From the IMG/VR virus record IMGVR_UViG_3300023174_000038, positions 284,702 through 348,701 of that record: 64,000 bases of DNA. One strand, given 5' to 3'. The position numbers and the translations under genes are program-made. The notes under the pieces were generated by a model that was not told the origin of the DNA, made no database searches, and saw only the letters and a list, made by a program, of their open reading frames with translations. Shown in pieces: positions 10,895 to 48,105 of this stretch. Each line of letters begins with the position of its first letter. The stretch's first letter is position 1.

Positions 10895-11620
10895 TTAAAT
10901 AGCTTCTGGGCGTTTTTCTAATTTGTAACGTTTTCCAAGAAATTCCCCGTGCATTAGTGCTAGATAGCTTAATAGGGTTTCGTCATCATAATCAATAAAG
11001 TGATTACTATTGGTATAACGATAGCGCCAACTCCATGAAGGAGCAGTATTATTGTATCCTTGTAACCAGTATTTTAATGACGGGCTAGGATGTAAGTCTT
11101 TGGAACGTTTCAATAAATCATCTAATTGCGTAACAAATGATTCTTGGATCATTTTAGATTTCAAATAAACCCTATACTTATGTTTAGGGTCATTAACAAA
11201 TGCTTTTATTCCTACAAAATTATTTGTTTGAGCTTCTGTATAATCATAAAAGATACCATTTTTAATACTTTCACTAGTCTTTAATAAGGCTAAATCATTG
11301 CTAAAGATTGCTATTCTATTACTCTCAATACGAACTAATCCGGTATTGTTTTCTTTAATCATATTACGAAAATCTATAAACTTCCCAAGAGCCTCTAGAT
11401 TTTCTGTAACTACCGGTCTATCTGCATCTTTTATCTTTTTCCAACCAGTTAAGATATTATATCGTTTCATCAACCCATCAAAGTTTTTTTCATACATAGC
11501 ATATCTAACACCCTCTATAGAGAATCTTACACGATACTTGTATTTGCCATAGTAATCACTATCCCGATAATCGTAAAAATCAATACCCGGAGTATCAGTT
11601 GCTAATTTCAATAATCCCAT
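10895..11620 (-). CDS. Hypothetical protein
   Basis: 241 aa ORF with normal composition, follows clpA. Confidence 0.6.
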   Translation of the reverse strand: MGLLKLATDTPGIDFYDYRDSDYYGKYKYRVRFSIEGVRYAMYEKNFDGLMKRYNILTGWKKIKDADRPVVTENLEALGKFIDFRNMIKENNTGLVRIESNRIAIFSNDLALLKTSESIKNGIFYDYTEAQTNNFVGIKAFVNDPKHKYRVYLKSKMIQESFVTQLDDLLKRSKDLHPSPSLKYWLQGYNNTAPSWSWRYRYTNSNHFIDYDDETLLSYLALMHGEFLGKRYKLEKRPEAI

Positions 11621-13871
11621 CGGATCCTACTTTCGCTATTGATTTCTGTACTACATTGAACTCAATTTTATCATCTACTAATACACAAGTTACTGTAGCA
11701 TTTTTAATACGTTCAAACAATACTTTCTTACTGAGAGGTACACGAATCAATTCATCAATCTTCCGAGCTAATGGACGAGCACCCATCTTCTTATCATAAC
11801 CCTGTTCAGCCAAATAATCAATTACTGGCTCAGTTAAATTCAAACTGACATTATACTTGTCAAGTAATGATTTCTTTAGTTCTTCTGTAAACTTAATTAC
11901 AATCTTCTTAATAGCCAATGTATCTAGTTTACCAAACTTACAAATCAAATCAACACGATTTCTAAATTCTGGTTTGAAGAACTCTTTAATTGCTTTATCA
12001 TCCTCACCTGTCTTTTCTTGGCTACCGAATCCGATATTGTTTTTCTCACTATCACTACTACCCAAGTTACTAGTCATAATGATGATAGTATTTTTACAGT
12101 TAACTTCTTTACCATTACTACCAGTGATACGACCTTCATCTAACATCTGTAAGAAGATATTAAAGATATCCGGATGAGCTTTCTCTACTTCATCAAAGAG
12201 TAAGATACTATGTGGGTTCTTGCTCAAATCATTGATTAATCGTCCACCACCTACTTGACTATCACCAAAGCCAACATAGCCAGGAGGAGGACCAATCAAA
12301 CTTGATACAGAATGTTTCTCACTATATTCTGACATATCATACTTAAGTAATGTCATGTCAAGGTTTTTACTTAGTAGTTTAGCTAATTCTGTTTTACCTG
12401 TACCAGTTGGGCCTAAGAAGATAAAGCTTGCTGTAGGTTTGTTCTCATTACCAATACCAGCAAATGACACATATACACGTTCTAATACTTGTTCAACTGT
12501 TTCATCTTGTCCATACAGTTTACCTTTAATGTTAACTTCAAGGCTACTAATACGGTCGTAGTTATCATCGTTTAGTTTATCAGCAGGTACACCAGTGAAT
12601 CGTTCAACTTGTTCGTGTATTAGTTCTTTGGTAATTAATGCACCTTTGTTCATTGCAACACGTTGTTTAGCACAAGCCGCATCTAGCAAATCAATAGATT
12701 TGTCAGGGTTTTTACGGTCATGAATGTAACGTGCTGAACTATCAACTGCGGCAGTTATTGCTTCCTCAGTGATTTCTACTTCATGGAAATCATTCAACCG
12801 TGAGCTTAAACCTTTGAGGATACGAATTGTACTATCATGTGATGGTTCATCAATAGATACACGATAGAATCTACGCATCAATGCACGATCCTTCTCAAAA
12901 CTTTCGTAGTATTCTTCCCAAGTTGTACTAGCAATAACTTTAAGTGTACCTTTAGTGATAGCTGGTTTAATCATATTAGCAAAGTCAATACTTCCACTAG
13001 TAGATGAACCACTACCTTTCATGGTATGTGCTTCATCAATGAATAGTACTGATTTCTTTTTTGTGTTTAATGCATCCAGTACCTGTTTAACTTTTTCTTC
13101 AAAGTCACCACGATATTTACTTCCGGCAAGCAATGCACCTACTTCAAGTGAGTATAGTTCATGTCCGTGTAAGAATTCCGGTACTGTTTTATCAACTAGC
13201 ATTTGTGCTAGACCTTCAGCGATAGCAGTTTTACCTACACCCGGATCACCTACCATCAATACATTTGATTTGAAACGTTTAGCAAGAACATTAATCATAT
13301 CATCAAGTTCTGTACTACGACCAATCAACGGTTCAAGTTTACCTTGTCGTGCAAGATCGGTTAAGTTAGTAGTATATTCTTCAAGGATTTCATCAGCTTG
13401 ACTTTCTGATAGTTTAGCAGTGAACTCTTGACCCTTATATGTTTTTTGCCAATGTGCCACGAAATCATTTTTATTGATACCGTATTTTAATAAGAAATAA
13501 TGTGCATGACTATTGCCCTCACTAGCGATAGAGAGATATAAGTCAATAGTAGTTACTTGTCTACGACCAGTAAACAATACTTGTGTTACAGAACGATTCA
13601 TTACACGTTCCAAGCTATTTGTTTTGCGTGGTTGAACTTCTGTATCTGGATCTACTTTAGCTACAATAGCGTGTAAGCTATCAATATATGAAGTAACCTC
13701 TTGAATCATATTTGGGGTATCGCACCCAAAACTATCCAAACATTTTTTAAATGGTGTATGTGTTATAAGAGATAACAGTAAATGTTCAATTGTACAATAT
13801 TGATGTTTACGTTGTTTAGACAACTCAATAGCCTGTTCAATGATGGCTTCAATTTCGGGTGAATTATTCAC
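11595..13871 (-). CDS. clpA: ClpA-type Hsp100 AAA+ unfoldase
   Basis: GTG start with SD; Clp N-domain; two Walker A (GDPGVGKT, GPTGTGKT) and B (FIDEAH, LFDEVEK); no ClpB middle domain; IGF ClpP-docking loop. Confidence 0.92.
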   Translation of the reverse strand: MNNSPEIEAIIEQAIELSKQRKHQYCTIEHLLLSLITHTPFKKCLDSFGCDTPNMIQEVTSYIDSLHAIVAKVDPDTEVQPRKTNSLERVMNRSVTQVLFTGRRQVTTIDLYLSIASEGNSHAHYFLLKYGINKNDFVAHWQKTYKGQEFTAKLSESQADEILEEYTTNLTDLARQGKLEPLIGRSTELDDMINVLAKRFKSNVLMVGDPGVGKTAIAEGLAQMLVDKTVPEFLHGHELYSLEVGALLAGSKYRGDFEEKVKQVLDALNTKKKSVLFIDEAHTMKGSGSSTSGSIDFANMIKPAITKGTLKVIASTTWEEYYESFEKDRALMRRFYRVSIDEPSHDSTIRILKGLSSRLNDFHEVEITEEAITAAVDSSARYIHDRKNPDKSIDLLDAACAKQRVAMNKGALITKELIHEQVERFTGVPADKLNDDNYDRISSLEVNIKGKLYGQDETVEQVLERVYVSFAGIGNENKPTASFIFLGPTGTGKTELAKLLSKNLDMTLLKYDMSEYSEKHSVSSLIGPPPGYVGFGDSQVGGGRLINDLSKNPHSILLFDEVEKAHPDIFNIFLQMLDEGRITGSNGKEVNCKNTIIIMTSNLGSSDSEKNNIGFGSQEKTGEDDKAIKEFFKPEFRNRVDLICKFGKLDTLAIKKIVIKFTEELKKSLLDKYNVSLNLTEPVIDYLAEQGYDKKMGARPLARKIDELIRVPLSKKVLFERIKNATVTCVLVDDKIEFNVVQKSIAKVGSDGIIEISN

Positions 13872-13895
13872 ATCCAGTTCCTTTTAAAATAATAT

Positions 13896-14693
13896 TTACT
13901 GTGTTTTAGATTGCAAAATGCTATCAGTTATACGACTGTCTATATTATCAGGTATAAAGGGTTTTAGCAAGATGATTTGGTCGCCATATGCATTAGTACC
14001 TTGTATAGGCATTCCATGTCCGGCTAATTTTAAATGCATAAATGGTTGTGTTTTTGATGGGACAGTTACCTCTAGTGATTTCCCATTAATGGTAGTAAAT
14101 TGAAATGTAGATCCTACAATCAAATCCAATACAGATATAGAATGATTAGTATGTAAGTCATTCATTCTTCTTTCATATTTTAAATGATTATGTACCCTAT
14201 ATTCTACTATTAAGTCATGTGAATCAACTACCTTTTCATAACGTACTTGTCCACCATCAGGTATACCTTTTGGAATATTTACCCTTACCATATGTAATCC
14301 AGATGGTGTTTGTAGTTTTAATAGTTCTTCACCGCCATTATAAACTTGTTCTAAACTAATCCAATAGGTAGTCCTATATGTGTTTTGTTGTTGCGGGTGT
14401 TGTTGTCTAAACATTTGTCCAAACAGATCATCCATATTGAAACCATTCATATTGAAATGAAATCCACCACCCGGGAATCCTTGAAACGGATTACCTTGTG
14501 GCATTGGGTTATCATATTGTTGACGTTGTTGTGGGTCTGAAAGAATGCGATATGCTTCTTCAATCTTTTGAAATGTAGAAGTATCGCCGCCCTTATCAGG
14601 ATGATGTTTACCTGCTAATTTTCTATATGCTTTTTTTATGTCGTCGGCATTAGCATTTTTACCAACGCCTAATGTTGAGTAATGGTCTGTCAT
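13896..14693 (-). CDS. dnaJ: DnaJ/CbpA-type co-chaperone (class II, no Zn finger)
   Basis: J domain with HPD, G/F-rich linker, C-terminal substrate-binding domain. Confidence 0.9.
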   Translation of the reverse strand: MTDHYSTLGVGKNANADDIKKAYRKLAGKHHPDKGGDTSTFQKIEEAYRILSDPQQRQQYDNPMPQGNPFQGFPGGGFHFNMNGFNMDDLFGQMFRQQHPQQQNTYRTTYWISLEQVYNGGEELLKLQTPSGLHMVRVNIPKGIPDGGQVRYEKVVDSHDLIVEYRVHNHLKYERRMNDLHTNHSISVLDLIVGSTFQFTTINGKSLEVTVPSKTQPFMHLKLAGHGMPIQGTNAYGDQIILLKPFIPDNIDSRITDSILQSKTQ

Positions 14694-14700
14694 AATATCA

Positions 14701-14729
14701 AGTATAACACAGTTAGTGTGTTAAGTCAA
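14701..14729 (-). promoter_or_regulatory. Sigma70-type promoter of dnaJ-clpA
   Basis: TTGACT-17 nt-TATACT; spacer holds inverted repeat AACACA-N5-TGTGTT. Confidence 0.75.
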
Positions 14730-14735
14730 TATTTA

Positions 14736-15431
14736 TTATGATTTGCCTTCAATTTTTTCTTTTGTTCGGCAGTTTTCAAAGTGCCATCTACCCATAGTAT
14801 TTTTTCCACCAACTTTGTGGCAGTGAGGGCATTCAACTTGTTCTTTTGGTACTCCTTTAAATCGTAATGATGTTTGTTGTCGCAACTCATCCGTATGTTT
14901 TTTACCATAAAAAGGGTTAGTATTGCCTGGTCTACTTAGTTGTTTTCTGACCTCCGGCCTTTTAGCTGGATTGGACTCACCGTATTGCCAGTAGTTTTTT
15001 CTGCCTTTTAATTTAGTAGATACTTTTAACGCAATCTCCGGATCTCTCATAGGATTATTATTTCCTAATTTTTTAGGAGTATTTTTAGAAATTAACATAC
15101 GAACCTCAGGTCGTTTTGCAGGGTTATCCAATCCATATAATGGAGCAATAGAAATATTATCTGTTCTATTAATCCATTTTTCAGAATGTACTACTTTAAT
15201 TCTCTGTAGTACTCGCTGTTCCCATCGTCTAGCAGAAATAGAATTATTAAATATTTTTCGTACTTCAATAATTGAAGGCTCTCCGTACAATTGTACAATG
15301 GTGCTAACATGCCTGCTTGAAGTTTTGTAACTAACCCACAAATCACCCGGGTGACATTTTTTAGCATAGCGGACTCCGTAATACCATCTATTAATTTTTG
15401 GCCAACCTAATAGATATGTATAAGGTATCAT
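14736..15431 (-). CDS. Free-standing GIY-YIG-type homing endonuclease (HEG1)
   Basis: Likely start MIPYTY (ATGA overlap with upstream stop); YTY...YYGVR, NUMOD3-like NPAKRPEV repeats, C-terminal CPHC zinc motif. Confidence 0.75.
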   Translation of the reverse strand: MIPYTYLLGWPKINRWYYGVRYAKKCHPGDLWVSYKTSSRHVSTIVQLYGEPSIIEVRKIFNNSISARRWEQRVLQRIKVVHSEKWINRTDNISIAPLYGLDNPAKRPEVRMLISKNTPKKLGNNNPMRDPEIALKVSTKLKGRKNYWQYGESNPAKRPEVRKQLSRPGNTNPFYGKKHTDELRQQTSLRFKGVPKEQVECPHCHKVGGKNTMGRWHFENCRTKEKIEGKS

Positions 15432-16054
15432 TGTTTTCCTTCTAATTTTTCTTTTGTTCTTCCATAAGCTGCAACTCCTAATACAGCACCCATAGCAATA
15501 TGATAAAGTCCGGCACCTTGTAATGTTAACGGTTGCCATTGATTAGTGACTTGACCCTTACTCATTGCTTGTAATAAACTCCATAATACGGGGAATATAA
15601 CAAAATCACATGTACATGTTATCATATAAACGAATGCCATTAATGGTCGCCATTTTTTATTAATAAAATCTGTGTTATCATTAGCTACTAATACATCTGC
15701 CCCGCTTGCGGCATTTGTTGGGGCTGCTCCTGTGAGGACGGGTTGATTACTGTTTGATTGGTTAATGTTTTGTGTGCTACCAAATCCAGACGTTGGCGCT
15801 CCAAATCCTGAACCACCACCAAAGCCCGTTGATGTTGACGTACCAAAACCACCGGGTGAGCCGAAGCCTCCTGCTGACGGTGAGCCAAATGTTGAAGACC
15901 CGCCAAATGATATGTTGACTGCATTACTATCTCCAAATGAACTGCCTTGCGGAAATTGCTGTATTGTAGGATCAGCCGCTAACATTTCGTGATGGTCATC
16001 ATCTAATGTCATTGGTTGCTCAAATCCTGTTTTCTTAGGTAATATCGTTGCCAT
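15428..16054 (-). CDS. Holin-like membrane protein with FG-rich N-terminal region
   Basis: KWRPLMAFVYM... and YHIAMGAVLGVAAYGRTKEK hydrophobic segments typical of phage 3TM holin-like proteins. Confidence 0.65.
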   Translation of the reverse strand: MATILPKKTGFEQPMTLDDDHHEMLAADPTIQQFPQGSSFGDSNAVNISFGGSSTFGSPSAGGFGSPGGFGTSTSTGFGGGSGFGAPTSGFGSTQNINQSNSNQPVLTGAAPTNAASGADVLVANDNTDFINKKWRPLMAFVYMITCTCDFVIFPVLWSLLQAMSKGQVTNQWQPLTLQGAGLYHIAMGAVLGVAAYGRTKEKLEGKQ

Positions 16055-16611
16055 TATAAACCTGCCATTGCTTTAAATGCTTTAATATCAGCATCTTGTT
16101 TGTCAGCATGAATTACTTTGACTTCTAGTCCAGCACGTTCACGCATTTCATTAATTTCTTCTTCTTCAACTTCTTCTACCTCACGATAATCATGTGGGCT
16201 AATAGTTATTACTTGTTTCAATATATCTTCTTCAGGAGCATGTTCTTCTTCATCAACAACTATTGTCCAATCTTTAACTGGTATTGCTGTTAATGTTTCT
16301 AAATCATCTAGTAATTCTATGATACGTTTAGGTACGCTACTCCTACGATTCATTTCAACGAACACTAAGTATTGTCCGGGCTTTACTTCACCTTCACTTA
16401 CTTGAGCATCTAATACAAAGTCATAACCACGTTCAAACCAATCAACTAAATCATTACCGGCTGCTTCACTTTTAATAGTAAAAGCTAGTGTTACAATTTC
16501 ACTATCACTTCCCATATGTGCGGCATATTCATCTACAGTAACTGTAGGGATCATTTGACCTTCTAGGTCATGATAGTCTAAACCTTCATTTAATATAGTT
16601 TTATTAGTCAT
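16054..16611 (-). CDS. Hypothetical acidic protein, possible CTS-like start
   Basis: MTNKTILNE start; 185 aa. Confidence 0.55.
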   Translation of the reverse strand: MTNKTILNEGLDYHDLEGQMIPTVTVDEYAAHMGSDSEIVTLAFTIKSEAAGNDLVDWFERGYDFVLDAQVSEGEVKPGQYLVFVEMNRRSSVPKRIIELLDDLETLTAIPVKDWTIVVDEEEHAPEEDILKQVITISPHDYREVEEVEEEEINEMRERAGLEVKVIHADKQDADIKAFKAMAGL

Positions 16612-16612
16612 A

Positions 16613-17221
16613 TTACATTGCCGGTAATGGAGGAGGCATTCCCATGCCAGGTGCTGCTGTACCAGTTTGATCCATCATATCGTCTTGTTGATCGTCCTCT
16701 TCACCGGTATCTTCTTTATCTAAATCGTCATCATAAGCATCATCTAACTCATTCAAGTCAATATTCTGACCTGCTAAATCAACTGATCCTTCACGTATAT
16801 CATCCATCAATTCTTTAGGCATTTCAATGTAAACTAGCCATACTTCACGCATAGCAGTCTTTGGATATCTTGTACCGGGAATATAATCATCTGGATTTTC
16901 AACCGCTACAGGTACTTTAATCTTAGTTTTTTTGAACTTGATTTTGCAACCAACGCCGGCCAAACGTTTAGCACCACGTGGATCAGGCATTAATTTATAT
17001 GGGTACATGAATATACATGCTACTGTATAGCGTCTAACGTCAGGACCTTGAACTAATTCGCCCAATTCCCAATTTTTAAATGCATATAAGTCGGCTTCAT
17101 CTAGGACTCGCTCGTAGTCTAGTAGAACAGCCATTGATCCGTCGCTGGTAAATATACCTTTTACGGTGTCAATTATGCTTACATAATCAACGTTGTCAAA
17201 AAATTCGTCTGCGGTTTTCAT
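16613..17221 (-). CDS. Hypothetical protein
   Basis: Likely start MKTADEFF at 17221 (TAAATA 5 nt upstream); acidic and Pro/Met-rich tail. Confidence 0.6.
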   Translation of the reverse strand: MKTADEFFDNVDYVSIIDTVKGIFTSDGSMAVLLDYERVLDEADLYAFKNWELGELVQGPDVRRYTVACIFMYPYKLMPDPRGAKRLAGVGCKIKFKKTKIKVPVAVENPDDYIPGTRYPKTAMREVWLVYIEMPKELMDDIREGSVDLAGQNIDLNELDDAYDDDLDKEDTGEEDDQQDDMMDQTGTAAPGMGMPPPLPAM

Positions 17222-17391
17222 ATATATATTTATCTTTTGTAGTTTGAATACATCAAATAACGATATTTGATACCGTAGCCTAATATTTATCATTAATAGC
17301 TACACAATAAGTATGCTACTATGTCTCTATGTATTGACCTTAAATAAACTTGAGTGTTATGAGAACTCACGCTCTACAAAGGAGAATTAAC

Positions 17392-18174
17392 TTGAGCAAA
17401 AGAAAAACTAGCGCATTACGTACACAAGACACACGGTTTTCACACAATAAAAAACAAGATAATCAAACTTTTTATACACATGAATCAAAAACGATAGATT
17501 TCTCACAAGCACAGAGGGAAATGCGGGTCAATAAAAAGCCCGTTCAACTTATCCCCAAGTCAGTTAACCAAGAAAATTACATCCTCGCACTACTGGACGA
17601 AGAGACAGATATTGTCGTAGTCACAGGTCCTGCGGGTACTGGTAAAACTTACTTAGCTATGCTTGCTGCCATAAAAGCTATGCGTAATGGTGAATGTGAT
17701 AGAATTATATTATCTAGGCCAGCAGTAGGTGTTGATGATGAAAAACACGGTTTCTTACCGGGAGATATCAATCAAAAGATGGAACCATGGACTAGGCCGT
17801 TATTAGACGTTCTGCGTGAATACTACACCACAAAGGAAATAGCCCACATGCTAGAAGAACAGATAGTGGAAATTGCACCTCTAGCATTCTGTCGAGGAAG
17901 AAATTTCAAACATAGTTGGGTAGTATTAGACGAGGCACAAAACGCAACCCCGGGTCAACTCAAAATGATTATGACCAGAATCGGCGTCGGTAGTAAGATT
18001 GTAATTACTGGCGATATTGAACAAGCCGATCGTAAAACAGCCGACAACGGGCTATTAGATTTACAAAATAGGTTGAGGAAGGGGGTGATTCCGGGATTGC
18101 AATTATGTAAGTTTGAACTGAAAGATGTTCAACGACATAAAATAATTGAACATGTGCTTAACTTATATAGTTAA
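17392..18174 (+). CDS. phoH: PhoH-family ATPase
   Basis: TTG start after AAGGAG; GPAGTGKT, RPAV...GFLPG, RGR, LDEAQN, GDIEQAD. Confidence 0.93.
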   Translation: MSKRKTSALRTQDTRFSHNKKQDNQTFYTHESKTIDFSQAQREMRVNKKPVQLIPKSVNQENYILALLDEETDIVVVTGPAGTGKTYLAMLAAIKAMRNGECDRIILSRPAVGVDDEKHGFLPGDINQKMEPWTRPLLDVLREYYTTKEIAHMLEEQIVEIAPLAFCRGRNFKHSWVVLDEAQNATPGQLKMIMTRIGVGSKIVITGDIEQADRKTADNGLLDLQNRLRKGVIPGLQLCKFELKDVQRHKIIEHVLNLYS

Positions 18175-18176
18175 CA

Positions 18177-18205
18177 AAATGGGGCTTAGGCCCCATTTGT
18201 TTTTT
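18177..18205. terminator. Terminator hairpin between convergent genes
   Basis: AAATGGGGC-TTAG-GCCCCATTT followed by T-run. Confidence 0.75.
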
Positions 18206-18471: not shown

Positions 18472-18552
18472 TATAAATAGTAGTGTAGCCCACGAGAATC
18501 TGACCTCTCCGACTACTCTAATGCTCATATCTTGAAAGGAAGCACCAGCATG
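18472..18552 (+). promoter_or_regulatory. Late promoter plus conserved structured HEG leader (copy 1)
   Basis: TATAAATA then AGT-GTAG..CAC-GAGA/TCTC-C..CTAC-TCTAA-TGCT..AAGGA-AGCA-CCAGC-ATG. Confidence 0.8.
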
Positions 18553-19383
18553 ACTATTTATTATTTAATGATTAAGACGCATAATATTACGGGTCTTAAA
18601 TATTTGTGTCAAACTAAACAAAAGAATCCTATTAATTACACAGGTTCCGGAGTTGATTGGAAAATACACTTAAAAGAGCACGGCATAGATATTAGGACTA
18701 GTATCATTAAAGCATCAACTGATAAACATATCATCAATGAGTTAGGAAGACATCTCAGTAATCTATGGAAAATAACTACTGCCATGAATGATTACGGGGA
18801 CAGAATATGGGCTAATAAAATACCTGAAACGGGCGGTGGTGCAGGAGTTACTAGTGATATAGCAAAACAAAGATACGTAGATCATCCTGAGTTGATTGAA
18901 CAATTCAAGAAAACAATGACATTGCCGCAAAGTGTTCAGAGAAGAAAAAAATCTAGGGCTGTTACAGTTTCACAACCTGAATTTAGAGAAAAATTCAAAT
19001 CAACAATGAAACTTGCCATGAATAGACCAGAAGTCAGATTGAATAATAGCATCAATCAGACGAAAGCTCAAAATAGACCCGACGTAAAACTGAATAAAAG
19101 TATTAAACAAAAGGAAGCTCAAAATAGACCCGAAGTTAAGATGCTCAAGAGTAAAAATGGCAAAATAGCACAGAATAGACCAGAGGTTAAAGATTCCAAA
19201 TCAGGTAAAAATAATTATAGATACGATCCAACAATTCGCACATTTATTCATTCTGACGGAACGATAGAAAAAATGCCAGCTAACGATTTCAGTCTAAAGT
19301 ACAACTTAGATCGCGGGTGGCTATCCAATGTAATTCTTGGAAATAGAAAAACAATAAAAGGTTGGTCTGTTAAAGTGCAGTAA
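18550..19383 (+). CDS. Free-standing GIY-YIG (Seg-like) homing endonuclease (HEG2)
   Basis: IYYLMIKTHNITGLKYLCQT..YTGSG..WKIHL; ANKIPETGGG; five tandem NRP(E/D)V repeats. Confidence 0.8.
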   Translation: MTIYYLMIKTHNITGLKYLCQTKQKNPINYTGSGVDWKIHLKEHGIDIRTSIIKASTDKHIINELGRHLSNLWKITTAMNDYGDRIWANKIPETGGGAGVTSDIAKQRYVDHPELIEQFKKTMTLPQSVQRRKKSRAVTVSQPEFREKFKSTMKLAMNRPEVRLNNSINQTKAQNRPDVKLNKSIKQKEAQNRPEVKMLKSKNGKIAQNRPEVKDSKSGKNNYRYDPTIRTFIHSDGTIEKMPANDFSLKYNLDRGWLSNVILGNRKTIKGWSVKVQ

Positions 19384-20296
19384 GTTCACAAAGAGTTGCC
19401 GCCAAACTTATTTCAGGGATACCTACCATACTTAAATTAGCTAAACCATTTCTAATAACAATAATACTAGCATCACGCTTTTCATTAGACTTACCCCATA
19501 AATCTAAATTCTGATACATCCATGCATATGTATCTTCAATACGTGTAGGATACAATGCAATATATTGTAATAACTGTTGTCTGCCTTCAAGGATTTTACC
19601 CGCTTTAAACAAAGTAGTTGCTTCTACTAATAACTCATCTTCACCGCTACTTTGAGTTTGTGCTGATAACAATGTTCCTGTACTACTGTTAACTTGTAAT
19701 TGATTTAAACATTTACGCAAGTCTGGATACGTAGCACGTACATAATTATCCAAATCATCTAAATCAAATACAATGTTTTCACTCACTAACACAGTTGCCG
19801 CTCTCGCAGTGAACTCTGTTTTATCTGTTTTTGTAATGTGAAACTCATGGCATCGTGACTTTAATGCAGGGATAATCCTATGTTGATAGTTACATGTTAG
19901 AATAAATCGTGCGGTCATATGATATGCTTCCATATCGTTACGCAATGCCGCTTGCCCAGCTGGTGTCAAATAATCTGCTTCATCTAGTAATACTACTTTG
20001 AAGTTACCGAAAGGCATTGTTTGTACAAAGTTAACAATCTTGTTACGTACAACATCTACACTATTCTCACGTGATGCATTGATTTCTAATACATCATATT
20101 CACTTACATCAAGTTCATGGATCAATACTTTAGCAAGAGTTGTTTTACCTGTACCCGGATCACCTGATAGTAATAGATGAGGGATAGAGCCATCTTTAAC
20201 CCAACCATGTACTTGATTCTTTTGTCGTTCATCTACAAACACGTAGTCTGCTACTGTTGATGGCCTGTATGATTCTACCCAAAGTTTCTTATTCAT
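19370..20296 (-). CDS. Clamp loader ATPase subunit (gp44/RFC-small type)
   Basis: LWVESYRP, GDPGTGKTT, INAS, LLDEAD, SRC motif, PDLRKCLN. Confidence 0.92.
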   Translation of the reverse strand: MNKKLWVESYRPSTVADYVFVDERQKNQVHGWVKDGSIPHLLLSGDPGTGKTTLAKVLIHELDVSEYDVLEINASRENSVDVVRNKIVNFVQTMPFGNFKVVLLDEADYLTPAGQAALRNDMEAYHMTARFILTCNYQHRIIPALKSRCHEFHITKTDKTEFTARAATVLVSENIVFDLDDLDNYVRATYPDLRKCLNQLQVNSSTGTLLSAQTQSSGEDELLVEATTLFKAGKILEGRQQLLQYIALYPTRIEDTYAWMYQNLDLWGKSNEKRDASIIVIRNGLANLSMVGIPEISLAATLCELTAL

Positions 20297-46941: not shown

Positions 46942-47604
46942 TTACAAATCGCCTTCTTTACGATTCTCACTATAATATGCATCAAAACTACCAATATCTT
47001 TCATTTTACAATTATTTCCGTGCCATCTTACGTAATTACCTTTAGAAATAATTTTATCGCAATATTCACACGTAATCTGATACTCAGGTTTACACATTGG
47101 ATTGTTACTACCGGTCTTTAATGCATTTAATTTTGAAAGTTTTGGATTTTTCTTTCCGCGCATTGCACTTACTTTTCCAAACATTGGATTTTTATTACCA
47201 ACATTAGCAGAATTTCTAGCACTAAGTTGCGGATTCTTTTTTCCATACATGGGATGTTTATCACCAGCCCTGAGTGAGTTTCTTTCTCCTACTGTAGTAT
47301 TTTTTCTTCCGTAACAAGGATGATTCTCACCTCTATCCGAACCACCTGTTTCAGGTATCTTGTTTGCCCACTCATTACTTTTAACAATATTCCACAGTGT
47401 ACTGTAGTATCTCCCCCAAATACTCAATTCTTCTTTAGAGTGACATTCCCTAATAATTTCAGTATCAATGAATTTACCAAACTCTTTTAAATGAGATTTC
47501 CATTCTAATCCTGAACCCAAATATTTGTAGGGATCTTTAGTTGTTTTGCCGAGATATTTAATCCCAGTAACTTGGTGGGTCTTTTTGTATAGATAAATAA
47601 TCAT
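46942..47604 (-). CDS. Free-standing GIY-YIG (Seg-like) homing endonuclease (HEG4)
   Basis: IYLYKKTHQVTGIKYLGKT..YLGSG..WK.HL; ANKIPETGG; NUMOD3-like G..(H/N)PM(Y/F)GK repeats; C-terminal CEYC. Confidence 0.85.
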   Translation of the reverse strand: MIIYLYKKTHQVTGIKYLGKTTKDPYKYLGSGLEWKSHLKEFGKFIDTEIIRECHSKEELSIWGRYYSTLWNIVKSNEWANKIPETGGSDRGENHPCYGRKNTTVGERNSLRAGDKHPMYGKKNPQLSARNSANVGNKNPMFGKVSAMRGKKNPKLSKLNALKTGSNNPMCKPEYQITCEYCDKIISKGNYVRWHGNNCKMKDIGSFDAYYSENRKEGDL

Positions 47605-47671
47605 GCTGATTGCTCCTTCAAAGCATTAGAGTAACTGGGAAGTCTAATTCCGCGAGTTACACTATTATTTA
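47602..47671 (-). promoter_or_regulatory. Late promoter plus conserved structured HEG leader (copy 3)
   Basis: TAAATA-ATAGT-GTAACT-CGC-GGAA/TTCC-C-AGTTAC-TCTAA-TGCT..AAGG-AGCA-ATCAGC-ATG. Confidence 0.8.
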
Positions 47672-47673
47672 TC

Positions 47674-48105
47674 TTAAATATCACCATCCTTACGATGTTC
47701 TGAGTGGTAAGCATCAAATGACCCGCCGGGATATCTAGACTCAAGTTTTTTAATATTTTCTTGAATCACATGATTTGGATCTACATTGAGGGCCCTGCAG
47801 GCTGTAATCCAGTACCACATAATGTCACCTAATTCCCTAACCATATGGTAGGCATTCTCATCAGTTAATGGTTTACCCTGAAAAAACATCTTTTTGGGCA
47901 CTTCAATAAACTCACCTGCTTCAGCCGCTAATCCAAGACAAGCGGTTAATAACAATGGTACATTGATATCAGGACCATGTACCCCATCACCAATGTAATT
48001 AGCATCTAGCTCATCACACCGGTCCATAAACGTAGTCAAGTCATTGCTTGCTTTGCTTGTTACTGCTTCTACAAAATCTTTGTATTTGTTCAAATCAATA
48101 TTCAT
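47674..48105 (-). CDS. mazG: MazG-like nucleotide pyrophosphohydrolase
   Basis: LGLAAEAGEF.E..KK, ELGDIMWY, N..KL..RYP. Confidence 0.85.
   Translation of the reverse strand: MNIDLNKYKDFVEAVTSKASNDLTTFMDRCDELDANYIGDGVHGPDINVPLLLTACLGLAAEAGEFIEVPKKMFFQGKPLTDENAYHMVRELGDIMWYWITACRALNVDPNHVIQENIKKLESRYPGGSFDAYHSEHRKDGDI

What the first reader, a model, noticed from the sequence alone, without database searches (positions are those of the whole stretch)
14736..15460. HEG1 likewise ends with a copy of the upstream holin C-terminus
Seen: HEG1 ends RTKEKIEGKS* and the holin ends RTKEKLEGKQ*; 14736-14768 versus 15428-15460 match at 26/33 nt. HEG1 lacks the structured leader and is coupled to the holin stop by ATGA. 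A second independent case of the same footprint suggests a general insertion mechanism that duplicates gene ends.
Basis: partly seen in the sequence, partly recalled or inferred. Interest (0 to 1): 0.62.

Follow-up and report, generated by a model that had tools for sequence, protein, structure and literature searches.

The report
Homing endonuclease gene swaps host-gene tail
A selfish endonuclease gene in a 349-kb lake phage sits inside the last ten codons of a holin-like gene, brings its own replacement copy of those codons, and leaves the original ones fused to its own end; this layout is known from fungal mitochondria, and I found no report of it in phages.

Summary
Window 14736-14768 and 15428-15460 match at 26/33 nt (codon-shuffle P = 3e-5). 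Of 80 related viral contigs, 79 lack HEG1. Their holin-like gene ends RTKEKIEGKS* and is followed directly by the dnaJ promoter, matching the window's HEG1 tail plus downstream DNA (33/33 nt to L007, 32/33 to L017).

So the HEG1 tail is the resident, original holin end. The end now on the holin (RTKEKLEGKQ*) came in with the endonuclease gene and holds its ribosome-binding site and ATG (ATGA overlap). The net insert is 692 nt.

Eight other loci carry this HEG family at the same site. Most have the same imported tail, and their relics and junctions vary. The holin body is mosaic (co-converted), and HEG-positive loci are not one clade in the upstream gene (AU p = 6e-5).

HEG2, downstream of the MazG-like gene, shows the same layout with a 16-codon relic. 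Three different right junctions occur among its relatives.

Best reading: a GIY-YIG homing cassette that spreads by a homologous join on the left. The right join was first formed illegitimately, at microhomology. Cleavage is untested. The closest precedent is the fungal mitochondrial mORF gene hybrids.

The parts
15428..16054 (-). Holin-like membrane protein gene (208 aa), the host gene of HEG1
   Evidence: PF11351 GTA_holin_3TM 25.4 bits against a cut-off of 24.8. PHROG 3427 holin, E 3e-4. Found in 349 related viral stretches, always upstream of dnaJ in those examined.
15461..16050 (-). Holin body of the HEG-linked allele type (co-conversion tract; the left end is approximate)
   Evidence: At sites that separate the groups, 23 of 26 follow HEG+ loci L002/L242 rather than the closest HEG-less genomes L017/L025. 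The gene upstream follows the HEG-less type. The same pattern holds in L321 against its HEG-less twin L003: about 12% mismatches in the holin against 2-4% in the flanks.
15428..15460 (-). Imported replacement tail of the holin (RTKEKLEGKQ*), holding a purine-rich GAAGGA box (read by eye as the HEG1 ribosome-binding site) and the HEG1 ATG (ATGA)
   Evidence: 33/33 nt identical in L002 and 31/33 in L242, although the flanks are 84-92% alike. All eight substitutions fixed in HEG+ alleles and present in at most 10% of HEG-less ones lie at 15432-15481.
14769..15431 (-). HEG1's own coding part (221 codons): GIY-YIG domain, NUMOD3 region, C2HC zinc finger ending WHFENC
   Evidence: PHROG 314/655 homing endonuclease. 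NUMOD3 24.9 bits. Model residues 1-96 align to the I-TevI catalytic domain 1mk0, Z 8.9, rmsd 2.7 A over 89 residues. Absent from 79 of 80 related loci.
14736..14768 (-). Relic: the original last 10 codons and stop of the holin, now read in frame as the end of HEG1
   Evidence: 33/33 nt to the holin end of HEG-less L007 and 32/33 to L017, with the downstream DNA continuing to match. BLAST aligns the single tail of HEG-less loci to both window copies. Residues 227-231 have pLDDT below 50.
14701..14729 (-). Sigma-70-like promoter in front of dnaJ, left untouched by the insertion
   Evidence: TTGACT-17-TATACT with TG, 10 of 12 matches. A TTGAC-type box followed by a TATA-type box lies at this spot directly after the holin stop in most of the HEG-less loci.
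13896..14693 (-). dnaJ-like gene, the right flank
   Evidence: PF00226 and PF01556. Nearest to HEG-less L017 from the junction onward.
47674..48105 (-). MazG-like gene, the host gene of HEG2; its last 16 codons (47674-47724) are the imported tail
   Evidence: PHROG 229 MazG-like, E 8e-45. Its ...SEHRKDGDI* ending is the type of other lineages (L184, L188, L200, L219), not that of the loci sharing this window's downstream DNA.
47605..47673 (-). Leader between the MazG stop and the HEG2 ATG
   Evidence: Folded with flanks (47590-47685): -22.5 kcal/mol, z -2.6, 3 of 200 shuffles as good. Conserved in L329 and L330. No Rfam match.
46942..47604 (-). HEG2 (220 aa); its last 16 codons and stop (46942-46992) are the relic of the original MazG end
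   Evidence: The relic and the DNA downstream match HEG-less loci L161, L163-166, L192-193. Relatives L329 (no relic) and L330 (4-codon relic) have other right junctions.

Best explanation
HEG1 is a free-standing GIY-YIG (I-TevI/Seg-like) homing endonuclease gene. Its mobile unit is not the ORF alone. It is a cassette made of a donor allele of the host gene's 3' part, including the last ten codons and stop, plus the endonuclease ORF, which has no stop codon of its own.

Shown: the cassette lies inside the holin-like gene, directly before its original last ten codons. The imported tail completes the holin and contains the HEG's ATG and a purine-rich box upstream of it. The original tail stays behind and is read in frame as the end of HEG1, up to the old stop, 6 nt before the -35 box of the dnaJ promoter. 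The same layout holds for HEG2 behind the MazG-like gene.

Inferred: the enzyme cuts HEG-less alleles in or near the last ~50 bp of the holin gene, where all HEG-specific substitutions cluster. The break is repaired from a HEG+ genome during co-infection. The left side uses homology in the holin, giving a co-conversion tract of up to about 500-600 nt. The right join was first made by illegitimate, microhomology-guided repair inside the recipient's tail (one-sided homing). The HEG's native end, NCKxK(E), resembles RTKEK; the HEG2 end AAT-TGT-AAA resembles the MazG AAT-CGT-AAA. Once formed, the relic serves as the start of the right homology arm in later ordinary homing. This would explain why it is sometimes the recipient's allele and sometimes travels with the cassette.
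For: HEG-less junction: 79 of 80 related loci have a single tail followed by the dnaJ promoter, matching the window's relic plus downstream DNA. BLAST maps that single tail onto both window copies.

Cassette linkage: the imported tail is 33/33 nt identical in the window and L002. Six of nine HEG+ loci have exactly RTKEKLEGKQ*. Substitutions fixed in HEG+ alleles occur only at 15432-15481.

Mobility: the last 240 nt of the holin are nearest to other HEG+ loci and to the distant L036/37 lineage, while the flanks are nearest to HEG-less L017/L025. The AU test rejects a HEG+ clade in the upstream gene (p 5.9e-5) but not in the holin 3' part. L321 against its HEG-less twin L003 shows a diverged holin body, with the boundary at the relic.

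Relic origin: the relic is the local allele in the window (32/33 to L017) and in L321 (27/27 nt after two codons to L003).

Variable right joins: HEG1 family NC|RTKEK, NCKx|KEK, NC|KEK and none (L323). HEG2 family none (L329), 4 codons joined at an 8/9-nt match (L330), and 16 codons in the window.

Enzyme: I-TevI-like fold, Z 8.9. Residues Y4, Y6, Y17, Y18, G19, R21, E71 and N88 are invariant in 26 relatives.

Opportunity: a HEG-less relative occurs in the same lake sample.

Precedent: one-sided homing with microhomology junctions in T4 (review PMC2988022); the same architecture in fungal mitochondria (PMC3630166).
Against: No cleavage was tested, and the cut site is inferred only from where the substitutions cluster.

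In L002 and L242 the relic (VAG type) fits neither the window's relic nor the tails of their nearest sampled HEG-less relatives. So 'relic = recipient allele' is shown clearly in only two loci.

The dnaJ flank does not significantly reject a HEG+ clade (p 0.10).

For HEG1, most junction variety could come from one old event followed by gene conversion and small deletions in an A-rich run. Independent illegitimate joins are well supported only for HEG2.

The HEG+ group for the AU test was named after identity tables had been seen.

HEG1 itself does not reach any Pfam GIY-YIG threshold.
Confidence: 0.72

Rival explanations
1. Single ancient insertion inherited vertically. Most relatives later lost the HEG, for example by recombination between the two tail copies, and there is no ongoing homing. 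The differences among relics and junctions would be drift.
For: The HEGs at this site are old (57-85% aa identity among loci). L321 carries a decayed copy, called as 154 aa. The two direct repeats could support precise loss. dnaJ does not reject a HEG+ clade (p 0.10).
Against: A HEG+ clade is rejected in the upstream gene (p 5.9e-5). The holin body is mosaic relative to the flanks in the window and in L321. The window's relic is undecayed and matches the local allele at 32-33/33 nt, which points to a recent arrival. Loss between the repeats would leave the HEG-linked holin body in HEG-less genomes; the closest HEG-less relatives do not show this.
Confidence: 0.13
2. The insertion process itself copies the recipient's gene end, as a long target-site duplication or replication slippage would. 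Both tails were then originally the same local sequence and have diverged since.
For: Two HEGs in one genome show direct repeats flanking the insert.
Against: The two copies are different alleles from the outset. The upstream copy is identical between genomes whose flanks differ by about 14%, whereas the downstream copy follows the local lineage. Repeat length differs between loci of the same HEG (0, 4 and 16 codons for HEG2; 0, 8 and 10 for HEG1). Solved and mapped GIY-YIG enzymes such as SegB leave 2-nt overhangs, not 30-50 nt (abstract of PMC2330249, listed).
Confidence: 0.05
3. The tail is a selected, functional C-terminal module of the endonuclease, and its likeness to the holin end is convergence or domain sharing.
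For: The relic is always in frame and ends at the old stop.
Against: The tail varies with the host-gene allele. It is missing in L323, L327, L329, P0008 and P0015. It is predicted disordered, with pLDDT below 50. The DNA after it matches HEG-less loci, so the match is not confined to the tail codons.
Confidence: 0.04
4. Chance similarity of two A-rich Lys/Glu-rich gene ends.
For: Both ends are A-rich and short (33 nt).
Against: Codon-shuffle P = 3e-5. Only 1 of 4371 A-rich end pairs reaches 26/33, and it is this pair. The homology to HEG-less loci decides the matter.
Confidence: 0.01

Closest known systems
Mobile ORF (mORF) 'gene hybrids' of fungal mitochondria: Allomyces macrogynus atp6; Glomus atp6, atp9, cox2 and nad3; Rhizopus atp9; Mortierella cox2 (Beaudet et al. 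2013, PMC3630166, read)
   Same: An endonuclease ORF is inserted near the 3' end of a protein gene. It carries a foreign C-terminal coding piece in phase with the host gene. The native C-terminus is kept downstream and is closest to the allele of near relatives, while the inserted one is divergent. The ORF is sometimes in phase with host-gene sequence. One of the Glomus cases uses a GIY-YIG enzyme.
   Different: Here the host is a jumbo phage, not an organelle. The duplicated pieces are only 10-16 codons, against 50-280 nt or more. The HEG's start codon lies inside the imported tail. The native tail is translated as the HEG's own C-terminus. Several alternative right junctions are seen for the same HEG and host-gene pair.
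Free-standing Seg (GIY-YIG) and Mob (HNH) homing endonucleases of T4-like phages (review PMC2988022, read)
   Same: Sporadic presence between conserved genes. Co-conversion of flanking markers. Overlap of the start with the upstream stop (mobE UAAUGA), read as translational coupling. RNA hairpins in front of some HEGs. Zinc finger and NUMOD-type DNA-binding parts.
   Different: The T4 examples are described as intergenic or as splitting genes. The word 'duplicat' does not occur in that review. No replacement tail or in-frame relic is described there.
One-sided intron homing with illegitimate double-strand-break repair in T4 (work of Parker and Belfort, as summarised in PMC2988022)
   Same: Homology on one side only still supports homing. 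The other junction forms at microhomology. This was proposed as a route to ectopic sites.
   Different: That was an engineered intron system. Here the footprints are natural, involve free-standing HEGs, and became fixed as a heritable arrangement.
I-TevI (PDB 1mk0, 1ln0 catalytic domain; 1i3j DNA-binding domain)
   Same: The fold of residues 1-96 (Z 8.9 and 8.5). A NUMOD3-type stretch matches the I-TevI DNA-binding domain in a profile search (E 0.004).
   Different: I-TevI is intron-encoded. Sequence identity is 12-14%. HEG1 ends with a C2HC zinc finger rather than a helix-turn-helix.

Membership tests
GIY-YIG homing endonucleases (I-TevI / Seg-like) | GIY-YIG alpha/beta catalytic fold | tested here: met
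   AlphaFold model, pLDDT above 90 over residues 1-90. VIA-align Z 8.9 (1mk0) and 8.5 (1ln0), followed by UvrC, Slx1 and PD-T4-3 GIY-YIG domains. Foldseek E-values alone were not significant.
GIY-YIG homing endonucleases (I-TevI / Seg-like) | Conserved motif residues (GIY-type Tyr, YIG-type Tyr-Gly, Arg, Glu, Asn) | tested here: met
   Y4, Y6, Y17, Y18, G19, R21, E71 and N88 are invariant in 26 aligned relatives. Their equivalence to I-TevI Y6, Y17, R27, E75 and N90 is by position and my own knowledge, not by residue-level superposition.
GIY-YIG homing endonucleases (I-TevI / Seg-like) | Curated profile match (PF01541 or PF19835) | tested here: inconclusive
   HEG1 itself matches neither profile. 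11 of 26 relatives match PF19835 SegE_GIY-YIG, best E 3.9e-8.
GIY-YIG homing endonucleases (I-TevI / Seg-like) | Presence/absence polymorphism at a fixed site among close relatives, with co-conversion of flanks | tested here: met
   79 of 80 viral loci lack it. Mosaic holin body. AU test.
GIY-YIG homing endonucleases (I-TevI / Seg-like) | Site-specific cleavage of the HEG-less allele and resistance of the HEG+ allele | not testable with these tools
   Only an inference is available: all substitutions specific to HEG+ alleles lie at 15432-15481.
Mitochondrial mORF gene hybrids (Allomyces atp6 type) | Foreign C-terminal piece in phase with the host gene, endonuclease ORF, and native C-terminus retained downstream and closest to relatives | tested here: met
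   for HEG1; for HEG2.
Mitochondrial mORF gene hybrids (Allomyces atp6 type) | Resident of an organelle genome | tested here: not met
   The genome is a 348,701-bp phage-like contig from lake water with capsid, tail and ClpA/DnaJ/PhoH genes. It therefore works like a mORF but is not filed as one.
Intron- or intein-borne HEG | Group I/II intron RNA or intein splicing domains around the HEG | tested here: not met
   No Rfam intron match at either site at E up to 1. The 692-nt insert is fully accounted for by the tail plus the ORF. The holin has its own stop codon.
Holin (PF11351 GTA_holin_3TM) | Profile match and C-terminal membrane helices | tested here: inconclusive
   25.4 bits against a cut-off of 24.8. 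PHROG holin E 3e-4. A homologue in PA5oct is annotated 'structural protein'. The hydrophobic stretches were seen by eye only. The name 'holin' is provisional.

The most novel reading that the evidence does not exclude
Tail-swap homing may be a distinct strategy in large phages that needs neither intron nor intein. A free-standing HEG would target the conserved last codons of a gene. It would survive there because its cassette carries a cleavage-resistant replacement tail that also contains its own translation start. The leftover direct repeat would provide both the right homology arm for later homing and a route to scarless loss. If so, gene 3' ends are systematic entry points for HEGs and for allele exchange in phage genomes.
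Probability: 0.3. Interest if true: 0.62.

Novelty: new variant of a known kind. Interest (0 to 1): 0.48.

Why it matters
It shows, from natural sequence alone, how a selfish endonuclease gene can settle inside a protein-coding gene of a phage without an intron or intein and without destroying the gene. It imports a spare gene end.

It gives natural footprints of one-sided, microhomology-joined homing. According to the one T4 review I read, that process was shown with an engineered intron system.

It explains short in-frame 'foreign' extensions on HEG ORFs that would otherwise mislead annotation.

It marks HEGs as drivers of allele replacement in neighbouring genes: here the whole holin-like gene body.

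It also yields a concrete target prediction for an uncultured phage enzyme, namely the last ~50 bp of the HEG-less holin gene.

Tried and rejected
DNA search of the locus against 50,697 phage records found no match. A protein search found only remote C-terminal matches in PA5oct-like and Atu_ph07-like jumbo phages.

A genome-wide scan of end-aligned ORF tails found, apart from this pair, only paralogue families. One weak pair at genome 16385-17154 was not pursued. That scan missed HEG2 because its threshold was too strict.

The other HEGs of this genome have no tail copy: window 18532-19383 (+), genome 170856-171563 (+, HNH) and genome 172899-173501 (-).

Among 32 more distant loci of the two HEG families with a same-strand upstream ORF, none is convincing. 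The best, L311, scores 27 against a null 99.9th percentile of 28.

None of the 80 MazG loci held two tail copies under my pattern.

A sequence search of HEG1 against PDB gave nothing. Foldseek alone was not significant.

The T4 review and the ICP1 HEG paper do not describe such duplications. Three further word searches found no phage report. The library covers open-access papers only, so this is not proof of absence.

The large representative-protein search was not used, as asked. No alternative genetic code was used.

Full report
SETTING. The window is the last 64 kb of a single 348,701-bp contig with 36% G+C. It is the lake-water metagenome contig Ga0214921_10000017. The gene content is that of a large tailed phage.

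Around the finding, all genes are on the - strand. In order they are two unnamed genes, a holin-like gene (15428..16054), HEG1 (15431 to 14736), dnaJ (13896..14693) and a ClpA-like gene.

HEG1 ends RTKEKIEGKS* and the holin-like protein ends RTKEKLEGKQ*. The two 33-nt ends match at 26/33, and the likeness stops exactly at the Arg codon. The HEG1 ATG overlaps the holin TGA as ATGA.

The match is not what A-rich Lys/Glu codons give by chance. A codon shuffle gives a mean of 17.3, sd 1.9, P(>=26) = 3e-5. Among 4371 pairs of A-rich ORF ends in this genome, only this pair reaches 26.

HEG-LESS RELATIVES. A search of viral contigs with the holin-like protein returned 80 loci at 53-86% identity. In 79 of them there is no HEG. 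In most of these loci dnaJ follows, preceded by a promoter-like TTGAC box.

In the closest lineages the gene ends RTKEKIEGKS*. The nucleotides of that tail and of the DNA after it match the window's HEG1 tail and what follows it: 33/33 nt for L007 and 32/33 for L017. BLAST aligns the single tail of each HEG-less locus to both window copies.

The difference between the two states is 692 nt (14769-15460). So the tail on HEG1 is the original end of the holin gene, and the tail now on the holin arrived with the HEG.

THE IMPORTED TAIL TRAVELS WITH THE HEG. Eight further loci carry a HEG of this family between holin and dnaJ: L002, L242, L321, L322, L323, L325, L326 and L328. HEG identity ranges from about 52% (P0013 in L326) to about 85%.

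- Six of the nine HEG+ loci (these eight plus the window) have exactly RTKEKLEGKQ* on the holin.
- Window and L002 are 33/33 nt identical there, although their flanks are about 86% alike.
- The final CAA-TGA supplies the HEG's ATG. A GAAGGA box lies a few bases upstream of that ATG; I read it by eye as the ribosome-binding site.
- All eight positions fixed in five HEG+ alleles and present in at most 10% of 24 HEG-less alleles lie at 15432-15481.

THE RELIC VARIES. After the zinc-finger motif WHFxNC, the HEG ORFs continue in several ways:

| Continuation after WHFxNC | Loci |
|---|---|
| RTKEKIEGKS | window |
| K-x-KEK plus a tail | L002, L242, L321, L325, L328 |
| KEK plus a tail | L322, L326 |
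| no relic; ORF reads straight into promoter DNA | L323 |

In the window and in L321 the relic is the allele of the nearest HEG-less genome. L321 matches L003 at 27/27 nt after the first two codons, with flanks 94-98% identical. In L002 and L242 the relic is a VAG-type allele that their nearest sampled relatives do not have. So the relic can also travel with the cassette.

Family members at other sites end NCKNKE*, NCKHK* or NCKYK*. The native end therefore resembles the holin's RTKEK. This offers microhomology for the first join.

EVIDENCE OF MOBILITY.
- In the gene upstream of the holin and in dnaJ, the window is nearest to HEG-less L017/L025. In the last 240 nt of the holin it is nearest to L002, L242 and the otherwise distant L036/37.
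- Informative sites switch from the HEG-less type to the HEG+ type near the holin start. Within the holin, 23 of 26 sites are of the HEG+ type.
- L321 against L003 shows about 12% mismatches in the holin body and 2-4% in both flanks, and the right-hand alignment begins at the relic.
- An AU test rejects a clade of window, L002 and L242 in the upstream gene (p 5.9e-5). It does not reject it in dnaJ (p 0.10), and it is compatible with it in the holin 3' part. The group was named after identity tables had been seen.
- A HEG-less relative with a VAGVAS-type tail occurs in the same sample, at about half the contig depth. Contigs of a run from another study reproduce both HEG+ junctions without differences.

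THE SECOND CASE. HEG2 (46942..47604) follows a MazG-like gene (47674..48105) and a 69-nt leader. HEG-less loci L161, L163-166 and L192-193 end GSFDAYYSENRK(L/P)GDL*. Their downstream DNA matches what follows the window's HEG2 relic. The present MazG end (...SEHRKDGDI*) is the type of other lineages.

Relatives of HEG2 at this site have different right junctions:

| Locus | Right junction |
|---|---|
| L329 | intergenic, ends NNCKSK*, no relic |
| L330 | only EGDL*, joined where the HEG's AAT-TGT-AAA meets the MazG AAT-CGT-AAA |
| window | 16 codons after a 4-residue filler |

The genes downstream of MazG differ between these lineages. A right homology arm was therefore lacking. This is the condition under which one-sided, illegitimate repair at microhomology was observed in T4 (PMC2988022).

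THE ENZYME.
- HEG1 matches PHROG homing-endonuclease families and NUMOD3.
- 11 of 26 relatives match SegE_GIY-YIG.
- The motif residues are invariant.
- The model's first 96 residues superpose on the I-TevI catalytic domain: Z 8.9, rmsd 2.7 A, 89 residues.
- The last five residues of the relic have pLDDT below 50.
- There is no intron at either site.

LIMITS. Cleavage and its position are inferred, not shown. For HEG1, one old illegitimate event followed by gene conversion and small deletions could explain most of the junction variety. Independent events are clear only for HEG2. The footprint is not general: three other HEGs in this genome and 32 more distant family loci lack it. 'Holin' rests on a borderline profile match.

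COMPARISON WITH WHAT IS KNOWN. The architecture equals that of the mitochondrial mORF gene hybrids: Allomyces atp6 and Glomus atp6, atp9, cox2 and nad3. There, a mobile endonuclease ORF brings a foreign C-terminus and leaves the native one downstream (PMC3630166).

The components are standard for T4-type free-standing HEGs: a Seg-like GIY-YIG HEG, co-conversion, coupling to the upstream stop, and a leader hairpin. I found no description of this layout in phages in the open-access library. I therefore rate it a new variant of a known kind, of moderate interest.

Noticed in passing
window 46942-48105: HEG2 behind the MazG-like gene shows the same imported-tail and relic layout, with a 16-codon relic. 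Its relatives have three different right junctions.
   Followed up: yes
window 18532-19383 (+), with L001 and L002 near the equivalent of window 18173-18198: A third NUMOD-repeat HEG lies antisense between - strand genes and overlaps the 3' end of ORF 19370-20296 by 14 nt. It has no tail copy. L001 and L002 carry an extra 0.8-0.9 kb next to phoH that the window lacks, possibly another mobile gene.
   Followed up: no
L321:2270-2965: The HEG at the holin site of this contig has an in-frame stop near its start and is called only from an internal Met (154 aa). This looks like a decaying copy, as expected in the HEG life cycle.
   Followed up: partly
L275:2150-2926, L276:2195-2959, genome 170856-171563: HNH-type HEGs, two of them between the frd and td genes, end with the same C2HC zinc finger (CPHC...HFxxC) as the GIY-YIG HEG1. 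The DNA-binding end appears to be shared between nuclease families.
   Followed up: no
genome 120000-149500 (outside the window): Long arrays of ORFs with near-identical C-termini (for example ...PDPSVDRY* and ...SSGSITF*). These are tandem paralogues or repeats, and some may be wrong-strand frames.
   Followed up: no
window 14736-15447, run X1: A contig in the probable source sample joins 14736 to 15447 with 18 other letters between. This is a HEG-less relative with a VAGVAS-type holin end, at roughly half the depth of the HEG+ genome.
   Followed up: partly
window 11595-18174: ClpA-like, DnaJ and PhoH genes lie side by side. These are among the core genes listed for the recently described aquatic 'moraphage' lineage (PMC12619734). 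Membership was not tested.
   Followed up: no
window 15700-16054: The N-terminal half of the holin-like protein is a Gly/Ser/Phe-rich low-complexity stretch that varies strongly in length and sequence among relatives.
   Followed up: no
L327:1236-3202: A HEG1 relative (P0010) sits behind a glycoside hydrolase 19 gene and a DUF4337 membrane protein gene, that is, in another lysis-type module. It has a 100-nt gap and no tail copy.
   Followed up: partly
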